IMG/VR virus record: IMGVR_UViG_3300014494_000005
Coordinates: 284,924-348,923 of that record
Length of the DNA stretch: 64,000 nt
Direction: 5' to 3' (one strand)
The notes below the pieces were generated by a model. The model was not told where the DNA came from, did not search any database, and saw only the letters and a program-made list of their open reading frames with translations. Shown here piece after piece: positions 2,662 to 23,409 of the stretch. How positions within the stretch are numbered: the stretch's first letter is position 1; the number at the start of each line of letters is the position of its first letter. The translations under genes were made by a program, and so were the position numbers.

Positions 2662-2663
2662 TT

Positions 2664-9087: not shown

Positions 9088-9176
9088 TTAATCGATGTAC
9101 AATAAAAGAGGTTGCTAAATGCAACCTTTTTTATTTTATTGCGTATACTCATTCATAAACCAAAAACACAATTACA

Positions 9177-9665: not shown

Positions 9666-9724
9666 TGTAACCTTTCTAACTAAAGTCCGTATACTCATAT
9701 ATAAACCAAAAAAACAATAAAGCA

Positions 9725-10201: not shown

Positions 10202-10257
10202 TAACTTTTTTACTTAATGTCCGTATACTCATTATAAACCAATAAAAACAAAAAGCG

Positions 10258-10611
10258 ATGAATCAAATTAATGAAAAAATTGATTATCAGAAAATCACAA
10301 AGAGTTGCAGAAATCTGAATGTAAAAGAACTTATGCAATTACTTCATATTAACGTTTCGATTTTCTGGTCATGGGGTGCTCATGCCTTCATAGTTGACGA
10401 CAAACGCAATACCAGAATGTTTAGAATGGCTGTGCAAGGAAATCATCATAACGGTCATGTATATATCTTTGTAAATGGTTTGGATTTATTTGATGTTTAT
10501 CTAACCACATTGCAGGGAACTATTAAGGACAAAATTGAAGGATTGTACTTTGACCAATTAGTTGAATGGATTGACGAGAAAATTGAAAAAATTCCTGCTT
10601 ATTCACATTAA
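10258..10611 (+). CDS. conserved hypothetical phage protein
   Basis: ORF track; own promoter and leader. Confidence 0.85.
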   Translation: MNQINEKIDYQKITKSCRNLNVKELMQLLHINVSIFWSWGAHAFIVDDKRNTRMFRMAVQGNHHNGHVYIFVNGLDLFDVYLTTLQGTIKDKIEGLYFDQLVEWIDEKIEKIPAYSH

Positions 10612-10616
10612 GAAAT

Positions 10617-10640
10617 AAGGGACAGATTGTCCCTTTTTTT
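10617..10640 (+). terminator. intrinsic terminator
   Basis: AAGGGACA-gat-TGTCCCTT plus T run. Confidence 0.8.
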
Positions 10641-10701
10641 GTCCCTTATAATGTAACTTTTTTATTTAAAATTCGTATACAATTATATAAAAACAAAAGC
10701 A

Positions 10702-10920
10702 ATGTTAAAACCAATTGACATAGGAACGTTAATAAGAACGCCAGTTAGTGAATTACAAAAACACGTAGTTGAATTATTTCATAATACCGATGAATATAAA
10801 ACCGAAGTTATTATAAATGGTGGTGAGATATTATATTCACCTTGTGGAATGTTCATTTATCTTTATAATGAAAATCTGGATACATTAAATTGGATGTTAG
10901 AACTTGGTATATTAAATTAA
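10702..10920 (+). CDS. hypothetical protein
   Basis: ORF track; own promoter. Confidence 0.8.
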   Translation: MLKPIDIGTLIRTPVSELQKHVVELFHNTDEYKTEVIINGGEILYSPCGMFIYLYNENLDTLNWMLELGILN

Positions 10921-10970
10921 ACTGTAACATTTTTGTATATTGTCCGTATAATAAACTAAAACCAAAAGCA

Positions 10971-11339
10971 ATGGAAAAAATAGAAATTACAATCAGTCAG
11001 GAATTAACTCCGCAAGATATCAATGATATTGTTAGTACAGCATTAGAAGGTGGTATTAATTACTGGTGCGGTGGAGCAATTATTAAAGATGTACCCGCAA
11101 AAGCAGAAGGAAAATATGATTTTGCAAGTGATGTTATTTCAGTTGGTGGAACGCTTGAATTATACGATGCAGAAAGTCCTGACAGATGGGAACTAAATCT
11201 TGAAAAATTATTAAATGGAATTAAAATGCATTGTACAAAAATTGGTAAAACTCCATTAGAACTAATGGATGATTATGATGCCTGTGATGCTGATTGCATT
11301 GTACAATATGCAGTAATGGGAGAAATAGTATTTGGCTAA
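10971..11339 (+). CDS. conserved hypothetical phage protein (start moved to 10971)
   Basis: promoter 10923 and leader AAAGCAATG; DIVSTALEGGINYW...DACDADCIVQYA..GEIVFG. Confidence 0.85.
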   Translation: MEKIEITISQELTPQDINDIVSTALEGGINYWCGGAIIKDVPAKAEGKYDFASDVISVGGTLELYDAESPDRWELNLEKLLNGIKMHCTKIGKTPLELMDDYDACDADCIVQYAVMGEIVFG

Positions 11340-11383
11340 AAATATAATCATTAGTTTTGTTTCATTGTCTTTATATTGGTTTG

Positions 11384-11424
11384 CCCCTGTGCTTCATTTA
11401 ACCAGAATGACACAGGGGTTTTTT
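11384..11424. terminator. terminator between convergent genes
   Basis: CCCCTGTG...CACAGGGG plus T run. Confidence 0.75.
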
Positions 11425-11752
11425 ATGCTTCATATTTTAAGATATAATTTTGTATTTCGTGGTTACTTAAATGTACAGTTTTTTGTTTGTGTTTACTGTC
11501 ATTAATAATTGTAATGATAAATTCGTTCTTCAATGTACTATAAGTAATTTTTAGTATCCTATCATACCAAAAATTAAAGTTTTCGATATTGTACTTAATA
11601 TCTAAAACTGTGCTAATCATAGTTTTTAGTTCGTTCATCATAGTATAGTGTTTGTTCATTACATAATTACTACATTTCGTCACAAATTCCAAATAAAAGT
11701 AGATGATAGAAATCATCATTTTATATGTTTCTTTAGCTATAATAATGTACAA
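11423..11752 (-). CDS. hypothetical protein inserted against block orientation (start uncertain)
   Basis: ORF track. Confidence 0.6.
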   Translation of the reverse strand: MYIIIAKETYKMMISIIYFYLEFVTKCSNYVMNKHYTMMNELKTMISTVLDIKYNIENFNFWYDRILKITYSTLKNEFIITIINDSKHKQKTVHLSNHEIQNYILKYEA

Positions 11753-11824
11753 GTTTTATTTAAAATAACGTAACCTTTTTAATTAAAAACCGTATATACT
11801 AATGTACTAAAAATAAAACATATT

Positions 11825-12133
11825 ATGGAAAATCTAAATGAAAAACAACAATTAATTTCTTTATGTTATAAAGAAGTTAAACCAAATAATTTTGTTAAAA
11901 CAATTGGTTTTCATTTACTTCATTATAATATGGAAACTAAAAAATGGAGTAATTATTTTTTAGGTAAAAATGACCAAATTTGTATATGGCAGACTGTTAA
12001 ATATGAACAAACAGAATTTAGTACTTTATCTGCATTTCTTAGATACACAGAATGTTTTACAAAAACTACATTTTATAATACAGATACAGATTTTTCTATT
12101 TTAACACTTCTTGAAGTTTTTTCTAATATGTAA
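11825..12133 (+). CDS. hypothetical protein
   Basis: ORF track; own promoter. Confidence 0.8.
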   Translation: MENLNEKQQLISLCYKEVKPNNFVKTIGFHLLHYNMETKKWSNYFLGKNDQICIWQTVKYEQTEFSTLSAFLRYTECFTKTTFYNTDTDFSILTLLEVFSNM

Positions 12134-12193
12134 ATTGTAACCTTTTTAAATAAAATCCGTATTATCTACATAAACCAATAAAAACAGAAAGCA

Positions 12194-12754
12194 ATGGAAG
12201 CAGTTAAAACAATTCAGTACAAAAATCACATTATTAATATCATTCCAGATGAATTTTATAATAGTGATACTATGCTTGGCGAAGATGAAGAAGTATTTTT
12301 GCTTTATTATCACAGGGACTTCTACATTAAAAAAGATGGTTTTCCTGAACCTAAATCAAATGAAGATATTAAAGCATTGAAAAAAGATTATTTCTTATTT
12401 ATTGTCTATGCTTATATTCATTCAGGCGTTTCATTATCACTTGGCAATGATACATATCCTTTCAATGACCAGTGGGACGTTTCAAATTGTGGTTATGTTT
12501 TAATTAAAAAAGATTCTGGTATTGATAAACCCAGAGAAGCAGCACAATCATTGATTGATGAATATAATGATGTATTGTCCGGCAATGTTTATGGTTATCA
12601 AGTTACTTTTAATGATGAAGTAACTGATAGCTGTTGGGGTTTTGTTGGTGATATTGACAAGTCTGGCATTATTGATGAAGCAAAAGGAATTATTGATTAT
12701 AATGTTGAACACAATAAGGAAAAATTTGCTGAACAATTGACATTGGAATTATAA
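12194..12754 (+). CDS. conserved hypothetical phage protein
   Basis: YAYIHSGVSLS...WD...G..YGY...DSCWGFVG pattern. Confidence 0.85.
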   Translation: MEAVKTIQYKNHIINIIPDEFYNSDTMLGEDEEVFLLYYHRDFYIKKDGFPEPKSNEDIKALKKDYFLFIVYAYIHSGVSLSLGNDTYPFNDQWDVSNCGYVLIKKDSGIDKPREAAQSLIDEYNDVLSGNVYGYQVTFNDEVTDSCWGFVGDIDKSGIIDEAKGIIDYNVEHNKEKFAEQLTLEL

Positions 12755-12853
12755 AACAACATTGTTCAATGTACATAAAAGAGGTTGCTATAATGCAACC
12801 TTTTTAATTAAAATCCGTATACTATTATTATAAACCAAATAAAACAAAACAAA

Positions 12854-13192
12854 ATGGAAAAGATAATAACTAATAAAATTTTGACAATAAAGGCATACAT
12901 AGCATTTGCTGAATTTGTTGCAAAACCTGAAAATCTAAATTCATTAATAACCAAATTGGAATTAATTGAAAAAGAAATTAAACGAGGTAAAAATACCGAT
13001 AAAGGTTTATGGTTTAGATTTTTTAAAGGTGATACTGCAGCCACAACAATTGATAATTTGAAAGATACATTTGAAATCGAAACGCCAATGTACATAAGTA
13101 GTACTTCAACAGCCAAAAAAAATAAAGAATATATGATTGAAAATATTTGTATTGCTTTAAATGAAGTATCTTTACAATTATATTATTCATAA
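12854..13192 (+). CDS. hypothetical protein
   Basis: ORF track; own promoter. Confidence 0.8.
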   Translation: MEKIITNKILTIKAYIAFAEFVAKPENLNSLITKLELIEKEIKRGKNTDKGLWFRFFKGDTAATTIDNLKDTFEIETPMYISSTSTAKKNKEYMIENICIALNEVSLQLYYS

Positions 13193-13269
13193 ATCGTAAC
13201 TATTTTAAATAAAATCCGTATACTCATTATAATTAAGTTACAAGTATAAACCAATAAAAACAAAAAGCA

Positions 13270-13803
13270 ATGGGACAATATTACAAACCAGTGAATTTAG
13301 ACAAAAAGAAATTTGTTTATTCACACGACTACGGAAACGGTCTTAAATTAATGGAACATTCTTGGATTGACAATGATTTTGTTGCAATAGTTGAAAACCT
13401 TATTAAAAAAGGTGGCGACTGGTACGGCAATAGAATTGTTTGGGCAGGTGACTACGCTGAAAATGAACCAAAAAGAGAACACAATCTTTATCACATTGTT
13501 GGTGAAAATAAAATCACTCCCAATACAAAAAGAAATCCAAAACTCCGGTATTTAAAAAACTTAGATACAAAAGAATTTGTCAATCTCAGCAAAGTACCTG
13601 TAAGTGACGTTTATAACAATTTTAAATTCAGGATTCACCCTCTACCATTATTAACTTGTGAAGGTAACGGACAAGGTGGTGGCGATTACTTTGGCGAAGA
13701 TAAAAACAAATTGATTGGAAAATGGGCAAGAAACAGGGTTACAATACAATCACATAAACCCAAAGATGGAATTGAAATTGTTTTTGATTTGATTGAAAAA
13801 TAA
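13270..13803 (+). CDS. conserved hypothetical phage protein
   Basis: MGQYYKPVNLD...GLKLMEH...RIVWAGDYA pattern. Confidence 0.85.
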   Translation: MGQYYKPVNLDKKKFVYSHDYGNGLKLMEHSWIDNDFVAIVENLIKKGGDWYGNRIVWAGDYAENEPKREHNLYHIVGENKITPNTKRNPKLRYLKNLDTKEFVNLSKVPVSDVYNNFKFRIHPLPLLTCEGNGQGGGDYFGEDKNKLIGKWARNRVTIQSHKPKDGIEIVFDLIEK

Positions 13804-13931
13804 TCATTGTTCAATGTACATAAAAAGAGGTTGCTAATAATGCAACCTTTTTTATTTAAAATATATTCGTATATTTGTAACTATTTTATTTAAGATTCGT
13901 ATATACTAATATAAACTAAATAATAAAAATC

Positions 13932-14828
13932 ATGAGCAGACGAGTTAAAAAAACCAAAGTAGGTGCAACAGTTTGTACCATTGGCGACCTTCAATTTGAT
14001 GTTGAAATTCGCAACGAAACAATGACATGTAATAAAGAATATAGCCGTAAGGTTATAGGACAAATTAATGGCAGTGATTTTCTTTTAAATCAGTGTTCAG
14101 ACATTTACACCTTGGTGAAAAATACTGACATATTCCCAAACATTGAAAAGGTGTTAAATGATAATAATATCAAATTCAGTGTAACATATTCTCACATTAA
14201 CAACGTCAGATTTTATGCTGACTATATCATTGAAGACCAACGTTATTCTTATCACATGAATGGCACAACCGATTATGTTAAACCAATGTTAAGAGTTCAA
14301 CATTCTTACAATGGATTAACTAAATACAGAATTGTTTTCGGTTATTACCGCCTTGTTTGTACCAATGGAGCTACTATTCCAGTAGAACAAATGAAAAATT
14401 TCAATCTTTGTATTGTTGGAAAACATACTTTATCAATTGAACGTAGCTTTAATGAACTTGATAAAATGTTGAAGAACTTTGCTGTCAATGCAAAACAGAT
14501 AACCGAAGAAATAACTGCAAAGTACGAGTTACTTGGTGGTCGTATGGTTACCAAACTTGAAGACCGGGTAAAAGAAGTATTGAACGCTGTTAAAATACCA
14601 ATAGTTGATAATTCAAAGTTTAGTACATTGAATTACATTATAGGTAAAGCAAAAAATGAAGCAGATGACAGCGTTGGAAATCTTGGCTATCATGGAGTAG
14701 TAAACGATTTTCTTGTGTATAATGCAATTAATCAATACTTAAATGATAATAGTCGTAATATTGCCGTTCCTGAAAAACGTATGGAAACAGATTCAAAAGT
14801 ATTTGAATATATGCTTGAAAATGCTTAA
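13932..14828 (+). CDS. DUF932-like protein
   Basis: PMLRVQHSYNG...FGYYRLVCTNG signature (recalled). Confidence 0.7.
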   Translation: MSRRVKKTKVGATVCTIGDLQFDVEIRNETMTCNKEYSRKVIGQINGSDFLLNQCSDIYTLVKNTDIFPNIEKVLNDNNIKFSVTYSHINNVRFYADYIIEDQRYSYHMNGTTDYVKPMLRVQHSYNGLTKYRIVFGYYRLVCTNGATIPVEQMKNFNLCIVGKHTLSIERSFNELDKMLKNFAVNAKQITEEITAKYELLGGRMVTKLEDRVKEVLNAVKIPIVDNSKFSTLNYIIGKAKNEADDSVGNLGYHGVVNDFLVYNAINQYLNDNSRNIAVPEKRMETDSKVFEYMLENA

Positions 14829-14904
14829 GCAATGTACAAAAAAAAATGACCTTGTATTGTAACAAATGCAGGGTTTTTTCGTATAATAATTATAAAACAA
14901 AATA

Positions 14905-15078
14905 ATGGATAAAGAACTTGATGCACTTATGTTTGCAGTAAATGAGAAAGCAAATAAATCGAATGAAATTATGAATCAAAGTACTAGTGACATTGAAGAA
15001 TATAATTTTCATAAAGGTCAGTTTCAAGCATATTCAGAAGTTTACACTATGCTCGATAATATTAGGCAATCTTTGTAA
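14905..15078 (+). CDS. small hypothetical protein (57 aa, below ORF-track cutoff)
   Basis: MDKELDALMFAVNEK...NIRQSL after promoter 14858. Confidence 0.7.
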   Translation: MDKELDALMFAVNEKANKSNEIMNQSTSDIEEYNFHKGQFQAYSEVYTMLDNIRQSL

Positions 15079-15132
15079 CATATTGTCCAGAATTTCGTAT
15101 AATTATTATAAACCAATTAAAAAAATAAAGCT

Positions 15133-15390
15133 ATGTTACTACAAACCGAAGACAATAAAAAAATGTACTTAGTTCAATTAACCGATTTTAATGGAAATGA
15201 AATTGGATTGTACTTAGTTCCTGAGAATGTACCGCAAACTCAATTTGAAGAAGAAATTGAAAAGTATGGTGACCAAAGTGAATTTGATGAAAACAACGAA
15301 TTGGGTGTTGTAAGAGTTTTCGCAGAAGAAAGTATTTTGAGTGTTGTAAGAATTTTCGCAGAAGAAAGTATTGTTGATGTTGATTTTTAA
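15133..15390 (+). CDS. hypothetical protein with 36-bp internal duplication
   Basis: 15301-15336 and 15337-15372 (LGVVRVFAEESI / LSVVRIFAEESI). Confidence 0.8.
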   Translation: MLLQTEDNKKMYLVQLTDFNGNEIGLYLVPENVPQTQFEEEIEKYGDQSEFDENNELGVVRVFAEESILSVVRIFAEESIVDVDF

Positions 15391-15402
15391 AACATAAAGC
15401 AA

Positions 15403-15674
15403 ATGAAAAAAGGTTTTAAAATAGGTGACAAAGTATATTGGAGACTAATGATGGTAATATTATAAGCAGATGGTCAAGTAATAGAGACGATGGTAAAGAT
15501 ACTGTCTTTCTTGAACTTAATTTAAAACGAGAATTTAAAATTGATAGTATATTATTATTTCTTGGTAACTATAAACAAACGTATAATCTGTATATATCAT
15601 CTGCAGATACAAGCAATATGATATTAATAGGTAGTGAAAAACATACTCCAATTCCTGTGTATATAAAACATTAA
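15403..15674 (+). pseudogene. probable frameshifted gene
   Basis: ATG 15403 gives MKKGFKIGDKVYW; the long frame (ETNDGNII...) continues one base out of register. Confidence 0.45.
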
Positions 15675-15680
15675 AAAACA

Positions 15681-16019
15681 ATGGATGATATTAATGATTT
15701 TCTTGAAAACGAAAAAAATAATTTAGCTTCCAGTATTCAAAAATTTCTTGACTACAAATATAGAGACACAGTAAAAAAAGAAATTGGTGATAGAATTAAT
15801 GTAGTTGATTTTTCAAGTGTAACTCATGTAAACGGTGATGAACTTGAACCCGAAGAATATGATACAGATGATAATATACAAACATTTATGGTTATCGAAA
15901 CTAATCAAAAATATCAATTCCGGTCTTGTCATAAAACATATTCTCAAAACTTAATTATTGTTAATCTTAAAGATAAAAAACAATATAGAGTTAATTCTAG
16001 TCATGTAAAACTATTATGA
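15681..16019 (+). CDS. hypothetical protein
   Basis: ORF track. Confidence 0.8.
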   Translation: MDDINDFLENEKNNLASSIQKFLDYKYRDTVKKEIGDRINVVDFSSVTHVNGDELEPEEYDTDDNIQTFMVIETNQKYQFRSCHKTYSQNLIIVNLKDKKQYRVNSSHVKLL

Positions 16020-16020
16020 T

Positions 16021-16341
16021 ATGAACAAAAGAAATGCTATTATAGGTATCAAAGATATCATTAAGAAATATGGTGAAACTACCTCAATATATCTTAAGCT
16101 CAAAATTGAAGATAAACCTTGCTTAAGTTTAATTGTTAAAGGTAAAGAAATAAAATGTATATTTGTCGAATTGTATAATAAAGATAGTGTTACTGCTATT
16201 ACCAATATTAATGGTTATTTTAAAGAAAGTAATATTATTCCTTATGAAAATATTCCTGAACCAATATTAAATCAAATACTGAAACTATTAAAACATTACG
16301 AAAAAAGAAAAGTAGGAAATAAATACTTTGATATTTTGTAA
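16021..16341 (+). CDS. hypothetical protein
   Basis: ORF track. Confidence 0.75.
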   Translation: MNKRNAIIGIKDIIKKYGETTSIYLKLKIEDKPCLSLIVKGKEIKCIFVELYNKDSVTAITNINGYFKESNIIPYENIPEPILNQILKLLKHYEKRKVGNKYFDIL

Positions 16342-16388
16342 CATTTTTAATTAAAATCCGTATAATCATATATAACATTTAAATAACT

Positions 16389-16461
16389 GATAGTTGTAAC
16401 TGGAAACAGGGACCGAGTAGACCGAAGAGTGCACTGAACTCAGATGTTAGAATCGTTCTAA
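16389..16461 (+). ncRNA. candidate small RNA, family copy A
   Basis: no ORF after promoter 16337; GTTG-hairpin(CTG-GAAA-CAG)-GAGTAGAC-N23-GTTAGAATCGTTCTAA. Confidence 0.6.
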
Positions 16462-16508
16462 ATAATAATTGTCGAAAATGTTTAATATGTAGACAATTAA
16501 AGAAATAA

Positions 16509-16769
16509 TTATATATTTTTTCTAATATTTATATGATTTAATACTTCTATTAATAAAGGATGTTTATAATTTATAATATATGGTTTATCTCGTAAATAAT
16601 TAACATCAACTATTGGTGCACCATATTCATTATCAGTTTCAAATGGAATGTTTTCTTTTTTTAATAACTCAATATATCCCTTTTGTTGTTCAAGTAATGC
16701 TAATTCTAATTCATTTCCAATTTTAACTAAATCTGCATAATAATCAAAATCAATACTATATTGTTTCAT
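16509..16769 (-). CDS. hypothetical protein
   Basis: ORF track. Confidence 0.7.
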   Translation of the reverse strand: MKQYSIDFDYYADLVKIGNELELALLEQQKGYIELLKKENIPFETDNEYGAPIVDVNYLRDKPYIINYKHPLLIEVLNHINIRKNI

Positions 16770-16911
16770 ATTTTTATATTTTAAGTAAAGATAAATACTT
16801 TAAATATAAAATCCTATTCTTTTTTCTTTTTATTTTATTCTATTTGCATTGTACTATATATTGTGTAGTAATATGAAAATATTTACTATTTTTGTATTAA
16901 AATAATAATGT

Positions 16912-17421
16912 ATGAGTATTGAAAATAAAAATGAAAAGCGTAGACAATATTATGCTAAAAATAAAGAAAAAATAATTAAACAAGGAAAACAATGGCGTAT
17001 TAATAATAAAGAAAAGGTTAAAAATAATAAAAGACGATATTATTTAAAAAATAGAGAAAAAATTAAACAACAATGGATTGATAATAAAGAAATTCATAAA
17101 GAATATTATCTTAAATATTGGGACAGATATAAACAATATCGTATTGATAATAAAAAGAAAATAAAAGAAAGTGCAGTAAATAGAATTTATAAAATAACAC
17201 CAGAAAAACAAAACGAATTATATGTTAAACAAAATGGTTGTTGTGCTATATGTGGTATACCAGAAGATAAATTAAACTATTTTTTATCTATTGACCATAA
17301 TCATAAAACTAAAAAAGTAAGAGGATTGTTATGTCATACTTGTAATAGAGGCATTGGATTACTTAAAGATAATATTAATATATTACAAAAAGCAATTGAT
17401 TATATAAAAAATAGTAAATAA
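16912..17421 (+). CDS. endonuclease VII-like HNH nuclease (homing-type)
   Basis: QNGCCAICG...IDHNH...VRGLLCHTCNRGIG; K/Y-rich repeat N-terminus. Confidence 0.9.
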   Translation: MSIENKNEKRRQYYAKNKEKIIKQGKQWRINNKEKVKNNKRRYYLKNREKIKQQWIDNKEIHKEYYLKYWDRYKQYRIDNKKKIKESAVNRIYKITPEKQNELYVKQNGCCAICGIPEDKLNYFLSIDHNHKTKKVRGLLCHTCNRGIGLLKDNINILQKAIDYIKNSK

Positions 17422-17479
17422 TTGTAACATTTTTGGTTTAAATCCGTAATATAACACATAAACCAAAAAACATACACAA

Positions 17480-18307
17480 ATGAAATTCACTACAATTGCT
17501 CAAACAAAAACAGACACGGGCTTGTCTTATCTTGGTTCTGTTAACAAGAGTGCTAAACTTGCTAAGAACGGCAAAATTTCGCACCAATATACATATAGTA
17601 TCTATTTAGCACCTGCTAATATTTCTGGCTATAATGTATGCAGTCATAGTACGCCTGAATGTAGACTAAATTGTTTACATACTTCGGGGCGAAATGGTAT
17701 GGAAATTCTATCAGGTGTTAAGACAATGACAAATGATTGCCGTATTAAGAAAACCAAATTATTTTATGAACAACCTGAATATTTTATGCAATGGTTAATT
17801 GCTGAATTAGAACGGTATCAAAATAAAGCAAAAAAAGACGGTTATGGATTTAGTGTAAGGCTTAATTGTACTTCGGATATAAACTGGCAAACAGTTTTGA
17901 TAAATAGCAAAAATCTGTTTGAATTGTACCCGGACGTGGTTTTTTATGATTATACAAAAAACCCTGCTAAATTCATCAATAAGCCCAAAAATTATCATCT
18001 AACATTTTCATTTACCGGACGTAATGAAATATCATGTAAAGCATTACTTCAAAAAGGATTTAATATTGCAACAATATTTGATATAAAGAATGAAACAGAG
18101 TTGCCAAAAACATTTATGGGTTTTCCTGTTATTAATGGAGACAAAACCGATTATAGAGTTAATGACCCTAAAGGTATTATCGTTGGATTGAAATTTAAGA
18201 GAATTGCTAACCAAAAAGCAGAAAAGGATTGTTTTGTAGTTAATCCAACAACAGATGAACGTTGTCAGAATGTCAATGTACATGAAAATGAATTGACATT
18301 AGTTTAA
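17480..18307 (+). CDS. Gp88-like phage protein
   Basis: CxxxxxxCxxxC, RLNCTSD, FYDYTK, NYHLTFS, GDKTDYR..DP.G.IVGLKFK (recalled family). Confidence 0.75.
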   Translation: MKFTTIAQTKTDTGLSYLGSVNKSAKLAKNGKISHQYTYSIYLAPANISGYNVCSHSTPECRLNCLHTSGRNGMEILSGVKTMTNDCRIKKTKLFYEQPEYFMQWLIAELERYQNKAKKDGYGFSVRLNCTSDINWQTVLINSKNLFELYPDVVFYDYTKNPAKFINKPKNYHLTFSFTGRNEISCKALLQKGFNIATIFDIKNETELPKTFMGFPVINGDKTDYRVNDPKGIIVGLKFKRIANQKAEKDCFVVNPTTDERCQNVNVHENELTLV

Positions 18308-18339
18308 AATATATTATCTTTGTAGTTTATTTTTATAAA

Positions 18340-18540
18340 ATGGCAAACAAAGAGTATAACAAACAATGGTATATTGCAAATAAAGAACATATTAAACAAT
18401 ATAGGATTAATAATTCAGAAAAGATTAAAAATTATATGAAGGATTATTCTGAAAGGAATAAAGAAGCAATAAAATTAAAAAGAAAGAAATATATTAAAGC
18501 AAATAAAGAAAAAATAAAAATACAACAATGGAAAACTTAA
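18340..18540 (+). pseudogene. truncated N-terminus of an HNH-type nuclease
   Basis: NKEHIKQY/NKEKIK repeats like 16912 but no nuclease domain; runs into next leader. Confidence 0.55.
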
Positions 18541-18854
18541 AACTGTCTTTAGTTAAAACTGTAGAATATAATTTAAAACCCTTTGGTAAGTTCTTAATTA
18601 AATGGAACTGTGGCGAAAAATCAAAACAAAATCCAAACATAATACCATTTAGTGAACTTCATTTTGATTATAATACTGGTATGCCATATACTAAAGAACA
18701 ATACAAAGATATTGTTAAGTATATGAAGGCAAACAAAACTGATATACTAACCGAAAATGGTAAGTATTATACAATATTAAGTGAAAATCTGGTTGAATGT
18801 AAACACGGTAAATTAATTGATTATCGAAATAAATTAGAACTTCAAAATGTTTAA
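18528..18854 (+). CDS. hypothetical protein
   Basis: ORF track. Confidence 0.8.
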   Translation: MENLKLSLVKTVEYNLKPFGKFLIKWNCGEKSKQNPNIIPFSELHFDYNTGMPYTKEQYKDIVKYMKANKTDILTENGKYYTILSENLVECKHGKLIDYRNKLELQNV

Positions 18855-18873
18855 CCAATAAAAATATAAAGCA

Positions 18874-19407
18874 ATGAAAGAGCCAAAAATAACATTTAAA
18901 AATGTAAAGACTTTTCGAGGTATGGAAGGAATTGGATTAAACGCTGATATCTATATTAATGGTGTTAAATGTATATTTGTAATTGATGAAGCTAATGGTG
19001 GTGAATATAATTACGAAAATTATGAATATAACAATCCAAAAGCTGAACAGGTAAGAGCAAACATTAAATTAATGGACAATTATATTGCCAGTCTACCTGC
19101 AAAAATTTGTACTGATTTTGGTAAATCAATAAGTATTAAAGTTGATAGAGATACTTATATTAATGATAAATTACTTGAAATTGAAGAACAAAAAGCTGAT
19201 AAGAAAATGCAGAAGTTATTTAAAACAGGTATAGTATTTGGTGTACCAAATAGCGGTAAATATCAATACCTGAACTTCAAACGTCCATTGTCCGAAATAA
19301 TGTCAATGATTGTACAGAGACAAATTAATATTGTTAAGAAAGAGTATTGTAAAAATGGTGAACAAATTCTTAACACCAACCTTGCTAAACTCGGATTAAT
19401 TGTTTAA
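18874..19407 (+). CDS. hypothetical protein
   Basis: ORF track; leader AAAGCAATG. Confidence 0.85.
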   Translation: MKEPKITFKNVKTFRGMEGIGLNADIYINGVKCIFVIDEANGGEYNYENYEYNNPKAEQVRANIKLMDNYIASLPAKICTDFGKSISIKVDRDTYINDKLLEIEEQKADKKMQKLFKTGIVFGVPNSGKYQYLNFKRPLSEIMSMIVQRQINIVKKEYCKNGEQILNTNLAKLGLIV

Positions 19408-19668
19408 TATTGTACAAATGTTTAACCAATAAATAATATAATTATGATGTCAATGTTAGCAATTGCAATAATTGCTTGGTGGCATATATGTCTACCATTA
19501 TCAATAATATTAATTGCATTTTGTATTCTAATAATAGTTGTTAATGCAATAGATTATTAACACTAATGTCCGCAAGTTGTGCGGTGAATAATAATTATAA
19601 TGTCCGCATAATTTTGTAACAATTTAAACCAATGTACGTATATCAATGTACACAAAAACATAAACACA

Positions 19669-20130
19669 ATGGGAAAAGTAAAAGAAAAACAAGTACTTAT
19701 TGATGCAGTCATTGCTGACCTTAAGAAAGATTTTGAAGCAGGTGACTACACGGTATTGGAAGAACTATTGTTCATGATACCAAATGAGAACCTCATTCAT
19801 TCTCTACCAGAAGAAGACTGGAAAGAATATGAGAATGTACAAGAAAACGTACATGAGAATGTACAAAATGATAATGATTACTTTCTTGGTATTGAAACCT
19901 ATGACCCAAGAAATTTTAGTGATGAAGAAGTTCGGGAGTTTAAAGAAAAATGGGGTCAATCACACGGAGAACTCTGTGCTGAACTTGGTTATGATGAAGT
20001 CGATACTTCTGAGCTTATTATGATTGATTTCTTCTGGATTGAAGCAGATAAAAAATGGTATAATATTGCTGCCTCAATGTACACCGATAGAGAACAAGAA
20101 ATTGCTAATTACTTAAGACTTGGTAAATAA
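19669..20130 (+). CDS. acidic hypothetical protein
   Basis: ORF track; promoter 19615. Confidence 0.85.
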   Translation: MGKVKEKQVLIDAVIADLKKDFEAGDYTVLEELLFMIPNENLIHSLPEEDWKEYENVQENVHENVQNDNDYFLGIETYDPRNFSDEEVREFKEKWGQSHGELCAELGYDEVDTSELIMIDFFWIEADKKWYNIAASMYTDREQEIANYLRLGK

Positions 20131-20450
20131 TAATTAAAAACTTTATAATATGAATACATATCTTATTCTTTCATTTATTTTATTCCTGATATTAGGAATA
20201 TGTTGGACTAAAAGTAATTTCCTAAACCTTATAGTTAAAATTCTCTTATTTGGTATGGGAATTGTTGGACTTTTCTTGTGGTTACAATTAAATGGCTACA
20301 TTATAAAGATACATTAATATACTAATAGAATGTCCGTTCCATATTGTACAATAGGTATAATATTATTAATACTGTTTTGTATTGTACATGAAACATATTT
20401 AAAATATAAAAAGAAACACTAACCTTTTGTATTTATACAAAAGGTTTTTT

Positions 20451-20822
20451 ATGAATGTACTAAACCAGAATGTACTTGATAACTATGTTTCTTATTTAAA
20501 AAATAATAAATATAAGAATGTACTGCAGGAATTAAAACTTGATTATGATAGTGAAAATGGTACTGATTTCATCTTCCTGCTTTTAATTAAAATCAAACGA
20601 CATGAACATAATAAAGGTTGGGGTTCAAAAGTTCTTAAAGATATTGTACAAGTAGCTAATAAATATAATGTACAAGTCAGACTTTGGATAACAGCTATCT
20701 ATGGAATGAATTTAAATAGATTAATGAAATTCTATATGAAACAAGGTTTTGTCTTAGACCACGATGATTATATGATATACACACCAAAAAAAATTAGAAA
20801 AAATTGTAACAAATTAGAATAA
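20451..20822 (+). CDS. GNAT-like acetyltransferase (start moved to 20451)
   Basis: HNKGWGSKVL (motif A-like) and LMKFYMKQGF. Confidence 0.65.
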   Translation: MNVLNQNVLDNYVSYLKNNKYKNVLQELKLDYDSENGTDFIFLLLIKIKRHEHNKGWGSKVLKDIVQVANKYNVQVRLWITAIYGMNLNRLMKFYMKQGFVLDHDDYMIYTPKKIRKNCNKLE

Positions 20823-20855
20823 TATTCGTATCATTGTACATAAATTAGAAAAAAT

Positions 20856-21059
20856 ATGACAACAACATTAACAATAATCTTATACATATTTCTTTATCTT
20901 ATTGTTGGAAGAATATATACTAATCTCATGAAAAGTGATGAGTATGAAAATGCAGTTATTACTATCTTCTATCCAATAATAATCGTATGGAAAATTGCAA
21001 TGAGTATTGCTGATAATATAACAAACATTTTATTTAAAAAAAGTTCTAAAGATATTTAA
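20856..21059 (+). CDS. small membrane protein
   Basis: two hydrophobic segments; promoter 20805. Confidence 0.75.
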   Translation: MTTTLTIILYIFLYLIVGRIYTNLMKSDEYENAVITIFYPIIIVWKIAMSIADNITNILFKKSSKDI

Positions 21060-21067
21060 GAAACAAA

Positions 21068-21343
21068 ATGCCAACCGTAGTCTGACTGAAAATGATTTAC
21101 TATAGCTAAGTTGTCAAGTAAGTAGATGGTAGTCTTCGGACGGGAATTGAACTGTATTGTGGAGTAACGCACTCCAAAAGAGTAAGGCAGCTTAACGAAC
21201 TGCATACAGTGATGATATTCTTACGGCAATGGTTATTCGATGAGTGAGTTGCTACACTCCAAATTGCAATCGAGTAGAAAAACCCCTGTTATTCCCTGAA
21301 ACTGCACTTAGTACAGATATAAAAAGGAATTGCGGGGGTTTTT
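21068..21343 (+). ncRNA. candidate large structured RNA
   Basis: GC-richer ORF-free stretch with nested helices and a C(UUCG)G tetraloop. Confidence 0.6.
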
Positions 21344-21368
21344 CCTTTTAAAATACTTGATAAATTCA

Positions 21369-21472
21369 AAAAGTTGTTGTAGCTTTACAGCAGCTTTTTG
21401 TTTTTAGTGTTGTTCAAACCACCTGCTTTTATTTCATCTTTCATAAGTTAATTATTTTGCAGGTGGTTTTTT
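21369..21472 (+). terminator. two further tandem terminators
   Basis: AAAAGTTGTTGTA/TACAGCAGCTTTT (GU pairs work on + strand) and AAACCACCTGC/GCAGGTGGTTT plus T runs. Confidence 0.75.
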
Positions 21473-21525
21473 TATTTAATATTGTAACATTTTTAATTAA
21501 AATCCGTATAATATATTAATAAAAG

Positions 21526-21598
21526 GGTTGACATACCATTGTATGTTGAGAGAGTAGACTTCAACCTACCTATAACTCTGTTGTTAGAATCATTCTAA
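21526..21598 (+). ncRNA. candidate small RNA, family copy B
   Basis: GTTG-hairpin(ACATAC/GTATGT)-GAGTAGAC-N23-GTTAGAATCATTCTAA after promoter 21483. Confidence 0.6.
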
Positions 21599-21656
21599 AT
21601 AATATAATATTTGTAACATTTCCTGAAGATATCCGTATTATAAAGAAAACACAATT

Positions 21657-22676
21657 ATGGAAAAATTACCCACATTACATTTTCTACCATTAAATCAAGA
21701 CCAGAAAGATTTGATTATTTCAATTATAAATCATTTTGGTACTGCTCAACATCCGATTTGCAATAATACTACTATAGATGGTTTTATGGTCTCTTATTTG
21801 AAAGAGATTATTAATAGTAAGAAATTCAAAAAATCAATAAGTAATTTATCTGAAAACGGTAAAAGAATTTTAGCTGAAATTGAAGAAATAATATATCTTA
21901 ACCAAAAAAACACAATGAAAACAAAAACAAATTGGTCATCTCCAAAAACAAATATCTTTGCTGGTATAAATGACTTGCGCAAATGCTTTGCCAGTGGTTA
22001 TAAAGCCAGACTGGTCAGAGCACGTAATGAAGACTGTCAGCATCCTATTACGGAAAAAGCATATCCTAATGACTTCAGAAGCTACGAATTCTCTATAGGT
22101 TATATCAGTAATGTAAATAAAATAAAGTCTGAAGAAATAATGTATAATGAATTCGAAAAAAGTCTCAGTCTTAATTATATCAATTGTTATGGAACTACTG
22201 AAGCAAAAAATCGATATTACCAAACTGGTATATTAAGTAAAGACAATTTTCATACACAGGGTTGTTCTCATCTGGTACATGTAGATGACTATATTAAATT
22301 CCTTGAAAAATCAGGAGACCTTGACCGTGCACAAATGTACAAGAAACAATATAGAATACCTGAATATGGAAATACTGCACACTTCTTCGATTTCTATAGA
22401 TTAAAAAATGGTTATCATGATTGGAATGTGAAAAAATTTAAACGTAAACTCTGGGTTGTTGAAATGCTTAATGAGAAAGAACCTCAACCCCAGATTTCTA
22501 TAATGATGAAAACAATAATTAAAATTATTAATGTACTGGTATATCCTCTGAAATACATTCCCCAGAGGTCAGTACTGCGTATGAAAGAATATAATGTTCA
22601 TACATTCAGAGTTGGAGATGTAACAAATGGGTTCTGTGTTGAATTCCATATACCAAAGAAGTTCAGTTTTAAATAA
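21657..22676 (+). CDS. hypothetical protein, possible fusion with internal start at 21915
   Basis: in-frame leader-like TAACCAAAAAAACACAATG inside the ORF. Confidence 0.75.
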   Translation: MEKLPTLHFLPLNQDQKDLIISIINHFGTAQHPICNNTTIDGFMVSYLKEIINSKKFKKSISNLSENGKRILAEIEEIIYLNQKNTMKTKTNWSSPKTNIFAGINDLRKCFASGYKARLVRARNEDCQHPITEKAYPNDFRSYEFSIGYISNVNKIKSEEIMYNEFEKSLSLNYINCYGTTEAKNRYYQTGILSKDNFHTQGCSHLVHVDDYIKFLEKSGDLDRAQMYKKQYRIPEYGNTAHFFDFYRLKNGYHDWNVKKFKRKLWVVEMLNEKEPQPQISIMMKTIIKIINVLVYPLKYIPQRSVLRMKEYNVHTFRVGDVTNGFCVEFHIPKKFSFK

Positions 22677-22761
22677 AAATATTTTTCGCTCCGTTCTTGG
22701 AGCAACATTGTGTTTTGGTTTTTTTGGTTGATGTTTAATGGAGTTGTGACCCATTAAGCTG

Positions 22762-22792
22762 CCTCAGTGAAATTATATTCACTGAGGTTTTT
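22762..22792 (+). terminator. intrinsic terminator
   Basis: CCTCAGTGAA/TTCACTGAGG plus T run. Confidence 0.85.
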
Positions 22793-22832
22793 TATAAAAA
22801 TCTTTGTATTTATATGAAATTAATAGATTTTT

Positions 22833-23210
22833 ATGAGAACAAAAGAAGAAATATTAGAATATAATAAACAATATAAATTAAGAAATAAAGATAAGGTTGC
22901 AAAACATTGCGCAAAATATTATCAATTACATAAAAAAGAAATAAGTAAACGTTCAAGAATTGCTACAATAAAAGAACATGGATTAACATTAGACCAATAT
23001 GATGTTATTTTTAATAAACAGAATGGTAAATGTGTTATTTGTGGCAGACATCAAAGTGAATTAAAATTAACATTAGCTGTTGACCATGACCATATATCTG
23101 GTAAAGTAAGAGGATTATTATGTAATACCTGTAATCGTGGTATTGGTTATCTTCATGATGATATTAATTTATTAGAAAAAGCAATTCAATATATAAAAAC
23201 TAATCGTTGA
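22833..23210 (+). CDS. endonuclease VII-like HNH nuclease
   Basis: QNGKCVICG...VDHDH...VRGLLCNTCNRGIG. Confidence 0.9.
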   Translation: MRTKEEILEYNKQYKLRNKDKVAKHCAKYYQLHKKEISKRSRIATIKEHGLTLDQYDVIFNKQNGKCVICGRHQSELKLTLAVDHDHISGKVRGLLCNTCNRGIGYLHDDINLLEKAIQYIKTNR

Positions 23211-23253
23211 TTTTGTAACATTTTTAATTAAAATCCGTATAATATATAATAAT

Positions 23254-23328
23254 AGTTGTAACAGGATTGTACGCCTGAGACCAAGTATACTGATTAGTGC
23301 CTTTATGAATGTACGTAGAATCATTCTA
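23254..23328 (+). ncRNA. candidate small RNA, family copy C
   Basis: GTTG-hairpin(CAGG/CCTG)-AAGTATAC-N23-CGTAGAATCATTCTA after promoter 23214. Confidence 0.55.
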
Positions 23329-23409
23329 TATAATGTACATGAATAGATTGTCCATGAATGATTGTACACTTAAGCCATTGTACGACCATAATGTAAATTA
23401 TATCAACTA

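What the first reader, a model, noticed from the sequence alone, without database searches (positions are those of the whole stretch)
19409..20839. Heptamer AWTGTAC is ~40-fold enriched and written into coding sequence
Seen: 14 exact copies at 19409, 19631, 19645, 19834, 19858, 20076, 20343, 20381, 20454, 20469, 20517, 20643, 20667, 20833; about 0.3 expected per strand using my ~25% GC estimate. They shape the proteins (ENVQENVHENVQN; MNVLNQNVL). The motif also follows stop codons at or near 7330, 8523, 8757, 12768, 13813 and 14831, and overlaps many -10 elements (AATGTACGTA). Inference: sites for a phage DNA- or RNA-binding factor (repressor of the ECF class, partition/injection signal, or termination signal).
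Basis: partly seen in the sequence, partly recalled or inferred. Interest (0 to 1): 0.72.

Follow-up and report, generated by a model that had tools for sequence, protein, structure and literature searches.

The report
Sense-strand heptamer marking phage early genes
A strict 7-base word, A(A/T)TGTAC, is written about 14 times more often than expected, and only on the coding strand, through one block of small early-type genes of a 349-kb uncultivated phage and its relatives; it is a real, selected signal, but what reads it is still unknown.

Summary
All 14 copies are at the stated positions, against about 0.3 expected. The enrichment is regional. 49 sense copies and 5 antisense copies lie in window 6.6-24.3 kb, where about 3.6 are expected. 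A second cluster lies at 42.6-43.0 kb. The rest of the 349-kb genome is at chance in both orientations. The word is strict: one-mismatch variants are not enriched. It stands alone, with no partner element within 50 nt. It survives synonymous-codon shuffles and is conserved in five related phage lineages, with positional turnover.

The block is a cassette array of small genes that includes an ECF (SigW-like) sigma gene. Each cassette has a TTGTAAC-N16-CGTATAAT promoter and usually a terminator. Copies lie in coding sequence (all frames), just after stop codons or next to terminators, at two fixed offsets from the promoter -10, and in arrays at the ends of the transcription units.

Restriction avoidance, repeat artefact, ordinary promoter, partition site and symmetric operator are not supported. 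My best reading (about 0.35) is a mark specific to this gene class, read along the direction of transcription and most likely on the mRNA, with logic like T4 RegB. The main rival is a -10-like element read by sigma. AATGTA is the known single-element promoter of phiEco32 gp36.

The parts
6656..23409 (+). Co-directional block of about 45 small genes (cassette array) in which AWTGTAC is enriched: 49 sense copies against about 3.6 expected
19409..19415 (+). ATTGTAC, 1 nt after a stop codon and 28 nt before the ATG of a 38-aa ORF
19631..19637 (+). AATGTAC in a promoter spacer; its C is the C of the -10 CGTATAT (offset -6)
19645..19651 (+). AATGTAC 1 nt after the -10 octamer (offset +8), spanning the expected start site, 17 nt before the ATG
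19834..19840 (+). AATGTAC in coding sequence (frame AAT GTA C; ENVQ); first copy of a 24-nt local duplication
19858..19864 (+). AATGTAC in coding sequence (ENVQ); second copy of the 24-nt duplication
20076..20082 (+). AATGTAC in coding sequence (frame A ATG TAC; SMYT); position conserved in L003 and L007 orthologues
20343..20349 (+). ATTGTAC (palindromic ATTGTACAAT), non-coding
20381..20387 (+). ATTGTAC, non-coding, upstream of the GNAT-like gene
20454..20460 (+). AATGTAC at codons 2-4 of the GNAT-like gene (MNVL)
20469..20475 (+). AATGTAC in coding sequence (QNVL)
20517..20523 (+). AATGTAC in coding sequence (KNVL)
20643..20649 (+). ATTGTAC in coding sequence (DIVQ); first copy of a 24-nt local duplication
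20667..20673 (+). AATGTAC in coding sequence (YNVQ); second copy of the duplication
20833..20839 (+). ATTGTAC directly after the -10 CGTATC of a class I promoter (offset +6), 16 nt before the ATG
23266..23383 (+). Array of five exact copies plus the ATTGTCC and AATGTAA variants, in a non-coding stretch driven by a promoter at the convergent end of the block
42605..42968 (+). Second cluster: 3 copies in the last + gene, 2 copies plus 3 variants in the convergent intergenic region
12768..12805 (+). Typical 3' module: stop, 13 nt, AATGTAC, A-rich run, GGTTGC..GCAACC hairpin, T-run. The same design occurs at 7330-7369, 8757-8797 and 13813-13853
19614..19643 (+). Class I (SigW-type) promoter TTGTAAC-N16-CGTATAT that contains the 19631 copy
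7705..8271 (+). ECF-type sigma factor gene inside the block (best solved relative: B. subtilis SigW); AATGTAC lies 36 nt before its ATG and again 16 nt after its stop
4997..5003 (-). ATTGTAC on the - strand at offset -6 in the promoter of a - strand cassette; the orientation follows the gene. A second such copy is at 5957-5963

Best explanation
AWTGTAC is a selected cis-signal that stands alone and has a direction. It marks one temporal or functional class of genes: the co-directional cassette block of small early-type genes that contains the phage's SigW-like sigma gene, plus its downstream extension.

I think it is most likely read along the direction of transcription, on the transcript. A conserved sequence-specific RNA-binding or RNA-cleaving factor would then treat all mRNAs of this class alike, for example by processing them or by timed shut-off and decay. 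The logic is that of GGAG and RegB in T4 early mRNAs.

Copies in coding sequence (about 1-2 per kb) would ensure that each short mRNA carries a site. Copies between the stop codon and the terminator hairpin would separate the body of the mRNA from its protective 3' hairpin. The arrays at the ends of the units would deal with read-through RNA.

Shown: the enrichment, the strictness, the sense-strand restriction, the class restriction, selection at synonymous sites, conservation with turnover, and the positional preferences.
For: - The word is strict and stands alone. Only AATGTAC (31) and ATTGTAC (18) are enriched, and no other position within +/-50 nt is conserved in 98 or 163 sites.
- It is sense-only: 49 against 5 in the block. 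In coding sequence, sense copies exceed synonymous permutations in every lineage, while antisense copies are at expectation.
- It is specific to the gene class. All clusters lie in the block or at its extension, and elsewhere sense and antisense counts equal expectation (49 against 54.7; 71 against 69.5).
- It is conserved in five lineages whose sigma identity falls to 43% and whose G+C ranges from 24 to 36%. About half of the coding positions are conserved between the window and L003, and sites are gained and lost through synonymous changes.
- Copies are spread evenly along genes and in all frames, unlike a promoter.
- Copies are placed preferentially within 30 nt after stops (35 of 150 genes; 17 expected). 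They lie 2-22 nt before, or in the loop and 3' arm of, terminators with unrelated stems in different lineages.
- The copy stays with the upstream ORF when the downstream gene differs.
- On - strand cassettes the copies lie on the - strand.
- The block is transcribed in peat metatranscriptomes.
Against: - There is no direct RNA evidence. Only assembled RNA contigs were served, so ends could not be mapped, and contig ends do not pile up at the motif.
- The motif is not predicted to be more single-stranded than background heptamers (median unpaired probability 0.105 against 0.146, P=0.27).
- No RegB or MazF/PemK homologue is found in the genome, and no candidate reader was identified.
- 11 copies lie at +6..+10 from the -10, where the expected start site falls inside the heptamer. 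Transcripts from that promoter would not carry the whole word.
- 13 copies are locked at offset -6, which looks like a DNA-level link with promoters.
- The evidence that orientation follows transcription and not some other polarity rests on only four - strand copies. These come from two promoter variants, each found in both the window and L003, and the two variants are themselves similar.
Confidence: 0.35

Rival explanations
1. Reading at the level of sigma and RNA polymerase. The heptamer would be a -10-type element recognised on the non-template strand by one of the two ECF-like sigma factors encoded by the phage, as the single-element AATGTA promoters of phiEco32 gp36 are. It would act as secondary or internal promoters, or as sigma-dependent pause or retention sites along the units.
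For: - In phiEco32, the middle and late promoters used by the ECF-like phage sigma gp36 have one consensus, 5'-AATGTA-3', centred at -11.5, with A-14, A-13, T-12 and G-11 contacted specifically (PMC12276001).
- The genome encodes two ECF-like sigmas.
- The heptamer is exactly phased with class I promoters: only offsets -6 (13 copies) and +6..+10 (11 copies), and nothing at other offsets in the spacer or leader.
- Upstream regions that have the motif but no class I -10 place it 28-37 nt before the ATG, which gives normal leader lengths if transcription starts 8 nt after the C.
- In L009 and L015, copies inside terminator loops would place a start just after the T-run.
- Sense-only orientation is natural for this reading.
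Against: - Half or more of the copies are inside coding sequence, spread evenly along genes, with a broad distance to the next ATG. A bona fide upstream motif of this genome (GTATTTAT) is 70% intergenic and sits 12-20 nt before the ATG.
- Many copies lie directly upstream of intrinsic terminators, where a promoter would be futile.
- There is no -35-like partner and no start-site signal.
- ATTGTAC (37% of sites) departs from the A-13 that gp36 reads.
- Both sigmas resemble SigW (the promoter type already accounted for by class I) and show only weak similarity to gp36.
- The real class I -10 (CGTAT) is not dispersed in coding sequence, as a sigma-pause model would predict.
Confidence: 0.2
2. A polar DNA signal for DNA metabolism. 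The heptamer would act like a Chi site (attenuating a helicase-nuclease that enters from the distal side), as a strand-specific nick site, or as a recombination hot spot that promotes cassette shuffling in this hyperplastic region.
For: - It is a short, strict, oriented word dispersed mainly in coding sequence at 1-3 per kb, as Chi words are.
- Its density rises toward the distal ends of the units in the window, L003, L015 and L016.
- Homology between the window and L003 breaks within a few bases after the heptamer downstream of the sigma gene and of gene 8331.
- Gene content differs between relatives cassette by cassette, with one 98%-identical cassette among neighbours that are 70-80% identical.
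- Homing-endonuclease-like genes lie in and next to the block.
Against: - It is confined to about 6-10% of the genome, and neither enriched nor avoided elsewhere.
- The same word is kept by phages with 24-36% G+C, which probably have different hosts, whereas Chi words differ between genera.
- The orientation flips with gene orientation in the - strand cassettes (few cases).
- The exact phasing with promoters and the placement next to terminators are not expected for Chi.
- The ends of the genome are unknown. The block is internal in two independent assemblies.
Confidence: 0.12
3. A polar site for a DNA-binding protein. The protein would repress class I promoters (at offsets -6 and +8) and block or terminate elongating polymerase inside and at the ends of the units. 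This is.
For: - 24 copies overlap the -10 or the start site of class I promoters.
- Arrays sit at the two convergent junctions, and at the distal end of the block in the relatives.
- The sites are strict, as expected for protein recognition.
Against: - A protein that binds double-stranded DNA gives no reason for the near-absence of antisense copies in coding sequence.
- The sites are single asymmetric 7-mers with irregular spacing (12-62 nt) and no helical phasing.
- Most copies are far from promoters.
- No candidate DNA-binding protein is conserved with the motif. The only HTH protein nearby is a GIY-YIG endonuclease-like gene.
Confidence: 0.12
4. A by-product without a function of its own. 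The copies would come from hitch-hiking in repeated promoter-terminator modules, from short tandem duplications, and from peptide repeats (NV-Q/L, GNV).
For: - Five or six window copies belong to one repeated module of about 60 nt.
- At least two coding pairs arose by 24-nt duplications, and other pairs share 11-15 nt.
- Some coding copies in relatives lie in repeat proteins.
Against: - 142 of 163 sites share nothing beyond the word itself.
- The enrichment holds at synonymous sites in six independent gene sets, and only in the sense orientation.
- The word is kept while the surrounding sequence, the hairpin stems and the positions change.
- One-mismatch neighbours are not enriched.
Confidence: 0.05

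Closest known systems
T4 RegB target GGAG in early mRNAs (class-specific mRNA inactivation)
   Same: A very short sense-strand word concentrated in the transcripts of the early gene class. It lies between cistrons and allows the whole class to be handled together.
   Different: No RegB homologue is present. The word here is 7 nt, not 4. It is not part of a ribosome-binding site (this genome uses no Shine-Dalgarno). It is abundant inside coding sequence and next to terminators. Cleavage is not shown.
phiEco32 gp36 single-element promoters (AATGTA centred at -11.5; PMC12276001)
   Same: The hexamer is identical. The phage encodes ECF-like sigma factors. The element stands alone, is strand-specific and has no strong -35 consensus. 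Some copies have promoter-like geometry.
   Different: About 50-80 copies per genome region against six promoters in phiEco32. Half or more lie in coding sequence. There is an added invariant C, and T is tolerated at the second base. Many copies lie just upstream of terminators. Homology between the sigmas is only at superfamily level.
PeSL cassettes (promoter-early plus stem-loop) of hyperplastic regions in T4-type phages
   Same: Small ORFs each flanked by a stem-loop and a strong promoter. Gain, loss and exchange between relatives occur cassette by cassette. From my own knowledge of Arbiol et al. 2010.
   Different: The promoters here are SigW-type ECF promoters. The heptamer is an extra element that also occurs far from the modules, inside genes.
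Chi sites (RecBCD/AddAB)
   Same: A polar 5-8-mer, over-represented mostly in coding sequence.
   Different: It is restricted to one gene block. It is phased with promoters and terminators. The same word occurs in phages that probably have different hosts.
B. subtilis SigW / ECF promoters (TGAAAC-N16-CGTA)
   Same: The neighbouring conserved sequences TTGTAAC-N16-CGTATAAT match this type. The block's sigma is most similar to SigW (E 6.5e-14). The heptamer shares the GTA core and overlaps the -10 in 13 promoters.
   Different: The heptamer itself has no -35 partner and is not a class I promoter.

Membership tests
RegB-type class-specific mRNA cleavage system | Short sense-strand motif concentrated in early-class transcripts | tested here: met
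RegB-type class-specific mRNA cleavage system | RegB-family endoribonuclease encoded by the phage | tested here: not met
   PF10715 has no match in the whole genome at E<=1. PemK/MazF is also absent.
RegB-type class-specific mRNA cleavage system | Endonucleolytic cleavage within the motif | not testable with these tools
   Only assembled RNA contigs were available.
gp36-type single-element phage sigma promoter (AATGTA) | Consensus AATGTA on the non-template strand | tested here: met
   31 of 49 block sites are AATGTAC. The other 18 are ATTGTAC, which deviates at the base equivalent to A-13.
gp36-type single-element phage sigma promoter (AATGTA) | Located upstream of genes at a fixed distance from the start site | tested here: not met
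   24 of 54 copies lie in sense coding sequence. The distance to the next ATG is broad (median 322 nt). The control motif GTATTTAT is 70% intergenic and peaks at 12-20 nt. Copies also lie directly before terminators.
gp36-type single-element phage sigma promoter (AATGTA) | A gp36-like sigma factor | tested here: inconclusive
   Two ECF-like sigmas are present. Pairwise BLASTP of gp36 against the block sigma matches only region 2.1-2.2 (E 0.001). There is no match to the second sigma. Both are closest to SigW.
ECF (SigW-type) two-element promoter | -35 GTAAC/GAAAC, 16-17 nt spacer, -10 CGTA | tested here: not met
   This holds for the heptamer itself: no conserved partner within +/-50 nt. The feature is met by the separate class I promoters nearby (52 in the genome against 1.9 per strand expected).
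Chi site | Polar over-represented oligomer throughout the genome of the organism whose nuclease reads it | tested here: not met
   Within the phage it is confined to the block and is at chance elsewhere. The host genome is unknown and was not tested.
Restriction-site avoidance / Type III strand bias | Under-representation, or single orientation without excess | tested here: not met
   The word is enriched, not avoided. GTAC is at expectation genome-wide (ratio 1.08), whereas GATC, CGCG and GGCC are nearly absent.
Tandem or dispersed repeat family | Copies embedded in longer units that are similar to each other | tested here: not met
   Only a few local pairs of 11-24 nt and one module of about 60 nt. 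142 of 163 sites share only the word.
Iteron / partition-site array | Clustered repeats with regular, helically phased spacing in a non-coding locus | tested here: not met
   Spacings of 12-62 nt without phase. Most copies are dispersed in genes over 17 kb.
PeSL-type promoter/stem-loop cassette array | Small ORFs flanked by a stem-loop plus an early promoter, with cassette-wise variation between relatives | tested here: met
   This applies to the surrounding modules, not to the heptamer.

The most novel reading that the evidence does not exclude
A clade of uncultivated jumbo phages (probably of Bacteroidota) tags a whole temporal class of genes with a 7-nt code written into UTRs and, through codon and residue choice, into the proteins themselves. 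The code would be read by a factor that is not yet known. One candidate is a sequence-specific RNA endonuclease or RNA-binding protein unrelated to RegB. Another is an ECF-type sigma used in a new way, with dispersed -10-like words inside genes acting as pause, retention or restart sites.
Probability: 0.3. Interest if true: 0.8.

Novelty: new variant of a known kind. Interest (0 to 1): 0.62.

Why it matters
Signals that let a phage treat one temporal class of genes as a unit are known from very few model phages: RegB/GGAG, MotA boxes, and the late TATAAATA of T4. This is a comparable code in an uncultivated 349-kb phage clade. It is strong enough to constrain codon and residue choice, and it is conserved while almost everything around it changes.

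It gives a sequence handle for three things. First, delimiting the early, host-takeover gene set in related metagenomic phages. Third, asking how phages that use ECF-type sigmas and no Shine-Dalgarno time their gene expression.

The identity with the gp36 promoter hexamer also raises a question that can be tested: whether AATGTA recognition is an old property of phage ECF-like sigmas.

Tried and rejected
- Restriction or methylation site. GTAC is not avoided, and the word is asymmetric and enriched. Rejected.
- Two-block promoter. No partner element exists. Rejected.
- Ordinary single-element promoter. Its distribution is unlike that of the genome's own upstream motif GTATTTAT. Disfavoured.
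- Host-type Bacteroidota promoter (TTTG..TAnnTTTG). It is not related to the motif and only weakly enriched.
- RegB and MazF/PemK nucleases. Both are absent.
- Pairing with the very abundant RNA at about 21.06-21.23 kb. That RNA carries no GTACAWT complement.
- RNA accessibility of the sites. It does not differ from background.
- RNA contig ends at the sites. There is no excess, and the data are too coarse.
It has no Pfam family and belongs to a PHROG of unknown function. The model is a generic four-helix bundle without a significant PDB match, and only viral hypothetical proteins match in the ESM Atlas. This is a dead end.
- Mini-ORF or restart reading (A-ATG/TTG-TAC as a start codon after the stop). 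The downstream frames are not consistent. Dropped.
[quoted passage not shown] That system needs a 20-nt guide target and a G TAM. The two TnpB genes lie 44 kb from the sigma gene. Not applicable.
- Near-identical search in the phage collection. No match.
- Literature search for the word itself. Only primer hits.
- Rfam. No family matches in the window.
Full report
**Observation**

The 1,431-nt stretch should hold about 0.3 copies per strand. That figure comes both from base composition and from the rate in the rest of the genome. The whole window has 74 matches against 28.6 +/- 5.7 in dinucleotide shuffles.

The window is the last 64 kb of a single 348,923-bp virus contig with 26% G+C. Over the genome the word is far from evenly spread. 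All clusters of four or more same-strand copies within 600 nt lie in window 8.3-23.4 kb or at 42.6-43.0 kb. In window 6,600-24,300 there are 49 + and 5 - copies, where about 3.6 are expected. Three of the five - copies are only the reverse reading of palindromic ATTGTACAAT-type sites. An unbiased k-mer comparison of this block with the rest of the genome ranks AATGTAC (31 + / 1 -, 1.5 expected) second among all 7-mers. Only the core of a promoter ranks higher.

**How specific the word is**

Of all one-mismatch neighbours of AATGTAC, only ATTGTAC (18) is enriched, and AATGTCC weakly (5 against 0.6). GATGTAC, AATGTAA, AATGTTC and the others are at background. I aligned 98 sites from three phages, and then 163 sites from five lineages. 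No other position within +/-50 nt carries information, apart from a preference against A just before the word (C in 45%) and for A just after it. It is therefore a self-contained 7-8-mer. It is neither half of a two-block promoter nor the core of a longer repeat.

A few neighbouring pairs did arise by short local duplications: 24-nt units at 19822-19866 and 20636-20677, and others of 11-15 nt. Five or six window copies belong to one repeated 3' module of about 60 nt. The great majority of copies share nothing but the word.

**Coding sequence**

In the block, 24 copies lie in sense coding sequence, in all three frames (13, 2 and 8). They are spread evenly along the genes. The 23 copies in my + gene set compare with 8.7 after synonymous permutation within genes, 3.0 after shuffling codon order and 6.1 after resampling codons from the usage of the rest of the genome. 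No shuffle reached 23. For the two genes of the finding, 8 copies compare with 3.3 expected. Both residue choice (NV-Q/L/H, IVQ, MY) and synonymous codon choice (for example CTA/CTT for Leu in a TTA-rich genome) are bent toward the word. Outside the block, sense (49 against 54.7 expected) and antisense (71 against 69.5) counts in genes are at expectation, so the word is neither sought nor avoided elsewhere.

**What the block is**

The block is a co-directional array of about 45 small genes. One of them (7705-8271) is an ECF-type sigma factor, with Pfam regions 2 and 4. Its best solved relative is B. subtilis SigW, at E 6.5e-14. A second ECF-like sigma lies at 62.5-63.2 kb of the genome, next to a primase gene.

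Nearly every intergenic region of the block carries the module TTGTAAC-N16-CGTATA(A/C)T, followed by a conserved A-rich leader (TATAAACCAATAAAAACAATAAAGCAATG). The module is often preceded by a hairpin whose 3' arm and T-run double as the -35 region. The pattern G[TC]AAC-N15-17-CGTA[TA] occurs 52 times in the genome against 1.9 per strand expected. It is densest in the block. This is the SigW promoter type (TGAAAC-N16-CGTA, from my own knowledge). I call it class I.

Relatives differ cassette by cassette. One cassette is 98% identical in protein between the window and L003, among neighbours that are 70-80% identical. Its homology runs from the -35 to the terminator T-run. This layout resembles the promoter-early/stem-loop (PeSL) cassettes of hyperplastic regions in T4-type phages (from my own knowledge).

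The genome uses no Shine-Dalgarno: 3 of 430 genes have GGAG upstream, and the upstream regions are A-rich. It carries 33 tRNA genes, including a CTA-anticodon suppressor. It comes from peat and permafrost samples. A Bacteroidota-type host is therefore likely, but this is an inference.

**Where the copies sit**

There are five kinds of position.
- **Coding sequence**, as described above.
- **Just after stop codons.** In the window and L003, 26 of 61 genes have a copy within 30 nt of the stop. Over all lineages the figure is 35 of 150 genes, while a uniform spread of the intergenic copies would give 17.
- **Next to terminators.** In the window the post-stop copies lie 6-11 nt before GGTTGC..GCAACC hairpins (7330, 8757, 12768, 13813, 14831). 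In L007 one lies 2 nt before an unrelated hairpin and one inside another. In L009 and L015 they occupy the loop and 3' arm of yet other hairpins (AACGGAGTGCAGnAATGTACTCCGTTTT; ATCCCTGTACTTCAATGTACAGGGAT). The association with the 3' end is thus kept while the terminators are replaced. Downstream of the sigma gene, of gene 8331, of 12194 and of 13270, the copy is conserved between the window and L003 although the next gene differs. The copy therefore travels with the upstream ORF.
- **Phased with class I promoters.** Among 126 promoter-like sites of five lineages, the word occurs only at three sets of offsets from the C of CGTA. These are -6 (13 copies; its last C is that C), +6 to +10 (11 copies; directly after CGTATAAT, across the expected start site) and -47 to -54 (15 copies; the pre-terminator copies). 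Otherwise there are only three stray copies between -46 and +60.
- **Arrays at the ends of the units.** Five exact copies plus two variants lie at 23266-23398, in a non-coding stretch driven by a perfect class I promoter at the convergent junction. Five copies plus three variants lie at 42605-42968, at the next convergent junction. The last gene there (42467-42883) is the last gene of the equivalent block in relative G003. In G003 the block is continuous and also ends in a cluster.

In the five - strand cassettes at 4438-6463, and in their L003 counterparts, the only copies are on the - strand, at offset -6.

**Relatives**

Homologues of the sigma protein led to four further lineages.
- L003/L004: 74% sigma identity, 26% G+C.
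- L006/L007: 43% identity, 34.5% G+C.
- L009 (record G003): 46% identity, 36% G+C.
- L008 (record G002): 49% identity, 24% G+C.

All of them show the same word enriched on the gene strand downstream of sigma.
- L003: 36 of its 37 + copies lie in the 11-kb block.
- L006/L007: 15-16 copies on + against 3 on -.
- G003: 45 copies against 9, spanning 23 kb.
- G002: about 21 copies in 17 kb on the sigma strand.

In the more distant lineages most copies are in coding sequence (19 of 23; 15 of 20). Synonymous permutation is significant for sense and not for antisense in each lineage. Between the window and L003, roughly half of the coding positions are shared. The rest were gained or lost, often by a synonymous change such as GTAC to GTAT. 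Selection thus acts on having the word at a certain density on the sense strand, not on each individual site.

**Hypotheses tested and set aside**

- **Restriction or modification.** GTAC is at expectation genome-wide, while GATC (0 against about 650), CGCG (0 against about 31) and GGCC (3 against about 75) are essentially absent. The heptamer is asymmetric and enriched.
- **Repeat or peptide artefact.** Refuted.
- **Ordinary promoter.** The genome has a well-behaved upstream motif, GTATTTAT: 147 copies, 102 of them intergenic, peaking 12-20 nt before the ATG. AWTGTAC does not behave like it. Half of its copies are in genes, the distance to the next ATG is broad, and many copies sit right before terminators.
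- **Partition or iteron site, or symmetric operator.** There is no phasing, no symmetry, and the copies are dispersed over 17-40 kb.

**Two readings that remain serious**

*Sigma-level reading.* In E. coli phage phiEco32, the ECF-like phage sigma gp36 uses promoters with a single consensus 5'-AATGTA-3' centred at -11.5. A-14, A-13, T-12 and G-11 are read specifically (PMC12276001). The hexamer is identical, this phage has two ECF-like sigmas, and the exact phasing with class I promoters argues for a DNA-level link. Motif-only upstream regions also have promoter-like geometry.

Several points count against this reading:
- the distribution;
- the pre-terminator copies;
- the tolerance of T at the second base;
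- the absence of any -35 or start-site signal;
- sigmas that look like SigW and show only superfamily-level similarity to gp36;
- the true class I -10 is not dispersed in genes, as a sigma-pause model would predict.

*RNA-level reading.* A word that is sense-only, confined to one expression class, spread through the coding sequences and concentrated in the short 3' UTRs next to the terminator hairpins is what a class-wide mRNA handle would look like. The handle could be a site for a processing or decay endonuclease, or for an RNA-binding regulator. T4 RegB and GGAG are the precedent.

Several points count against this reading:
- I could not map RNA ends, because only assembled contigs of the metatranscriptomes were served;
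- predicted accessibility of the sites is not higher than background;
- no RegB or MazF homologue, nor any other candidate reader, was found;
- the +6..+10 copies would be cut short in transcripts from their own promoter.

*Chi-like or recombination reading.* A nick or recombination signal fits the dispersed polar pattern, the denser distal ends and the cassette junctions. It does not fit the class restriction, the promoter and terminator phasing, or the constancy of the word across phages of different G+C.

**Verdict**

The feature is real, selected and conserved. I commit to a directional, class-specific cis-signal read along the direction of transcription, most likely on the mRNA. My confidence is about 0.35. 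A -10-like word read by sigma is the main rival (about 0.2), followed by polar DNA-metabolism signals and a polar DNA-binding protein (about 0.12 each). A by-product without function is unlikely (about 0.05).

It is a new variant of known kinds of phage signal. It is not a member of any family I could test. RegB-type membership fails on the enzyme, gp36-type on the distribution, and Chi on the genome-wide criterion.

**Limits**

- The gene calls are my own greedy ORF sets.
- The promoter start sites are inferred from ECF promoter geometry, not mapped.
- The host is unknown.
- The evidence that orientation follows transcription, and not another polarity, rests on few - strand copies.

Noticed in passing
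window 20900-21300 (about 21060-21225): A stretch in the structured, G+C-richer non-coding region after gene 20856-21059 has word depths of 330-6,900 in three independent peat metatranscriptomes, against 0-20 for its neighbours. An Illumina adapter follows position 21225 in one run. This looks like a very abundant short phage RNA. It has no Rfam family and no copy in the relatives' loci that I held.
   Followed up: partly
window 16336-16508, 21482-21640, 23213-23409; L003:17415-17560; L007:10553-10700: Three copies of an identical strong class I promoter (TTGTAACATTTTTAATTAAAATCCGTATAAT) drive non-coding stretches of about 130-170 nt that end in GTTAGAATCATTCTAAATAAT. Counterparts exist in two relatives, so this is a candidate small-RNA family. 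The copies lie next to homing-endonuclease-like genes. The third copy has acquired the AWTGTAC array.
   Followed up: partly
whole genome (G000): GATC occurs 0 times (about 650 expected), CGCG 0 times (about 31) and GGCC 3 times (about 75). This is near-total avoidance of three 4-bp palindromes and suggests strong restriction pressure.
   Followed up: partly
whole genome; in the window for example 20429, 22806, 28730, 23977(-): A further stand-alone upstream motif, (A)GTATTTAT(A), has 147 copies. 102 are intergenic, and the motif ends 12-20 nt before start codons. It may be a late promoter or a translation signal. The Bacteroidota-type -7 box TATATTTG is also enriched upstream of genes (29 against 2.9).
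   Followed up: partly
genome 134.5 kb and 238-283 kb (outside the window): There are 33 tRNA genes, including one with a CTA anticodon (amber suppressor, called tRNA-Pyl by ARAGORN). No Shine-Dalgarno sequences are used anywhere (3 of 430 genes).
   Followed up: no
window 52068-53216 and 54604-55845: Two TnpB-like genes (OrfB_IS605 plus the Cas12f1-like TNB domain) lie in the phage genome.
   Followed up: no
window 16912-17421, 22833-23210, 23410-23955(-): Two Endonuclease VII-domain proteins and one GIY-YIG plus HTH protein (free-standing homing-endonuclease-like genes) lie in and at the edge of the cassette block.
   Followed up: no
window 13270-13803 and L003:15282-15815: This cassette is 98% identical in protein between two phages whose neighbouring genes are 50-89% identical. 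Its homology is bounded by the -35 and the terminator T-run. This suggests recent exchange of a single cassette.
   Followed up: partly
window about 4250-4440 (- strand) and L003:5200-5397: A conserved, unusually C-rich non-coding stretch (..CCCCCGTATCCCCCCCTCCTATAACCCCC..) lies downstream of the last - strand cassette. Its nature is unknown.
   Followed up: no
L008:10776-19354: 87-nt tandem repeats in coding sequence (29-aa protein repeats) dominate the k-mer statistics of that locus. They are unrelated to the heptamer.
   Followed up: partly
window 41939-42388; phiEco32 gene 37 (L018:19834-20274): The ORF at 41939-42388 looks to me like a macro (Appr-1-p processing) domain protein. This is judged by eye from its translation and was not scanned against Pfam. 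In phiEco32, a gene annotated as Appr-1-p processing family lies directly next to the sigma gene gp36.
   Followed up: no
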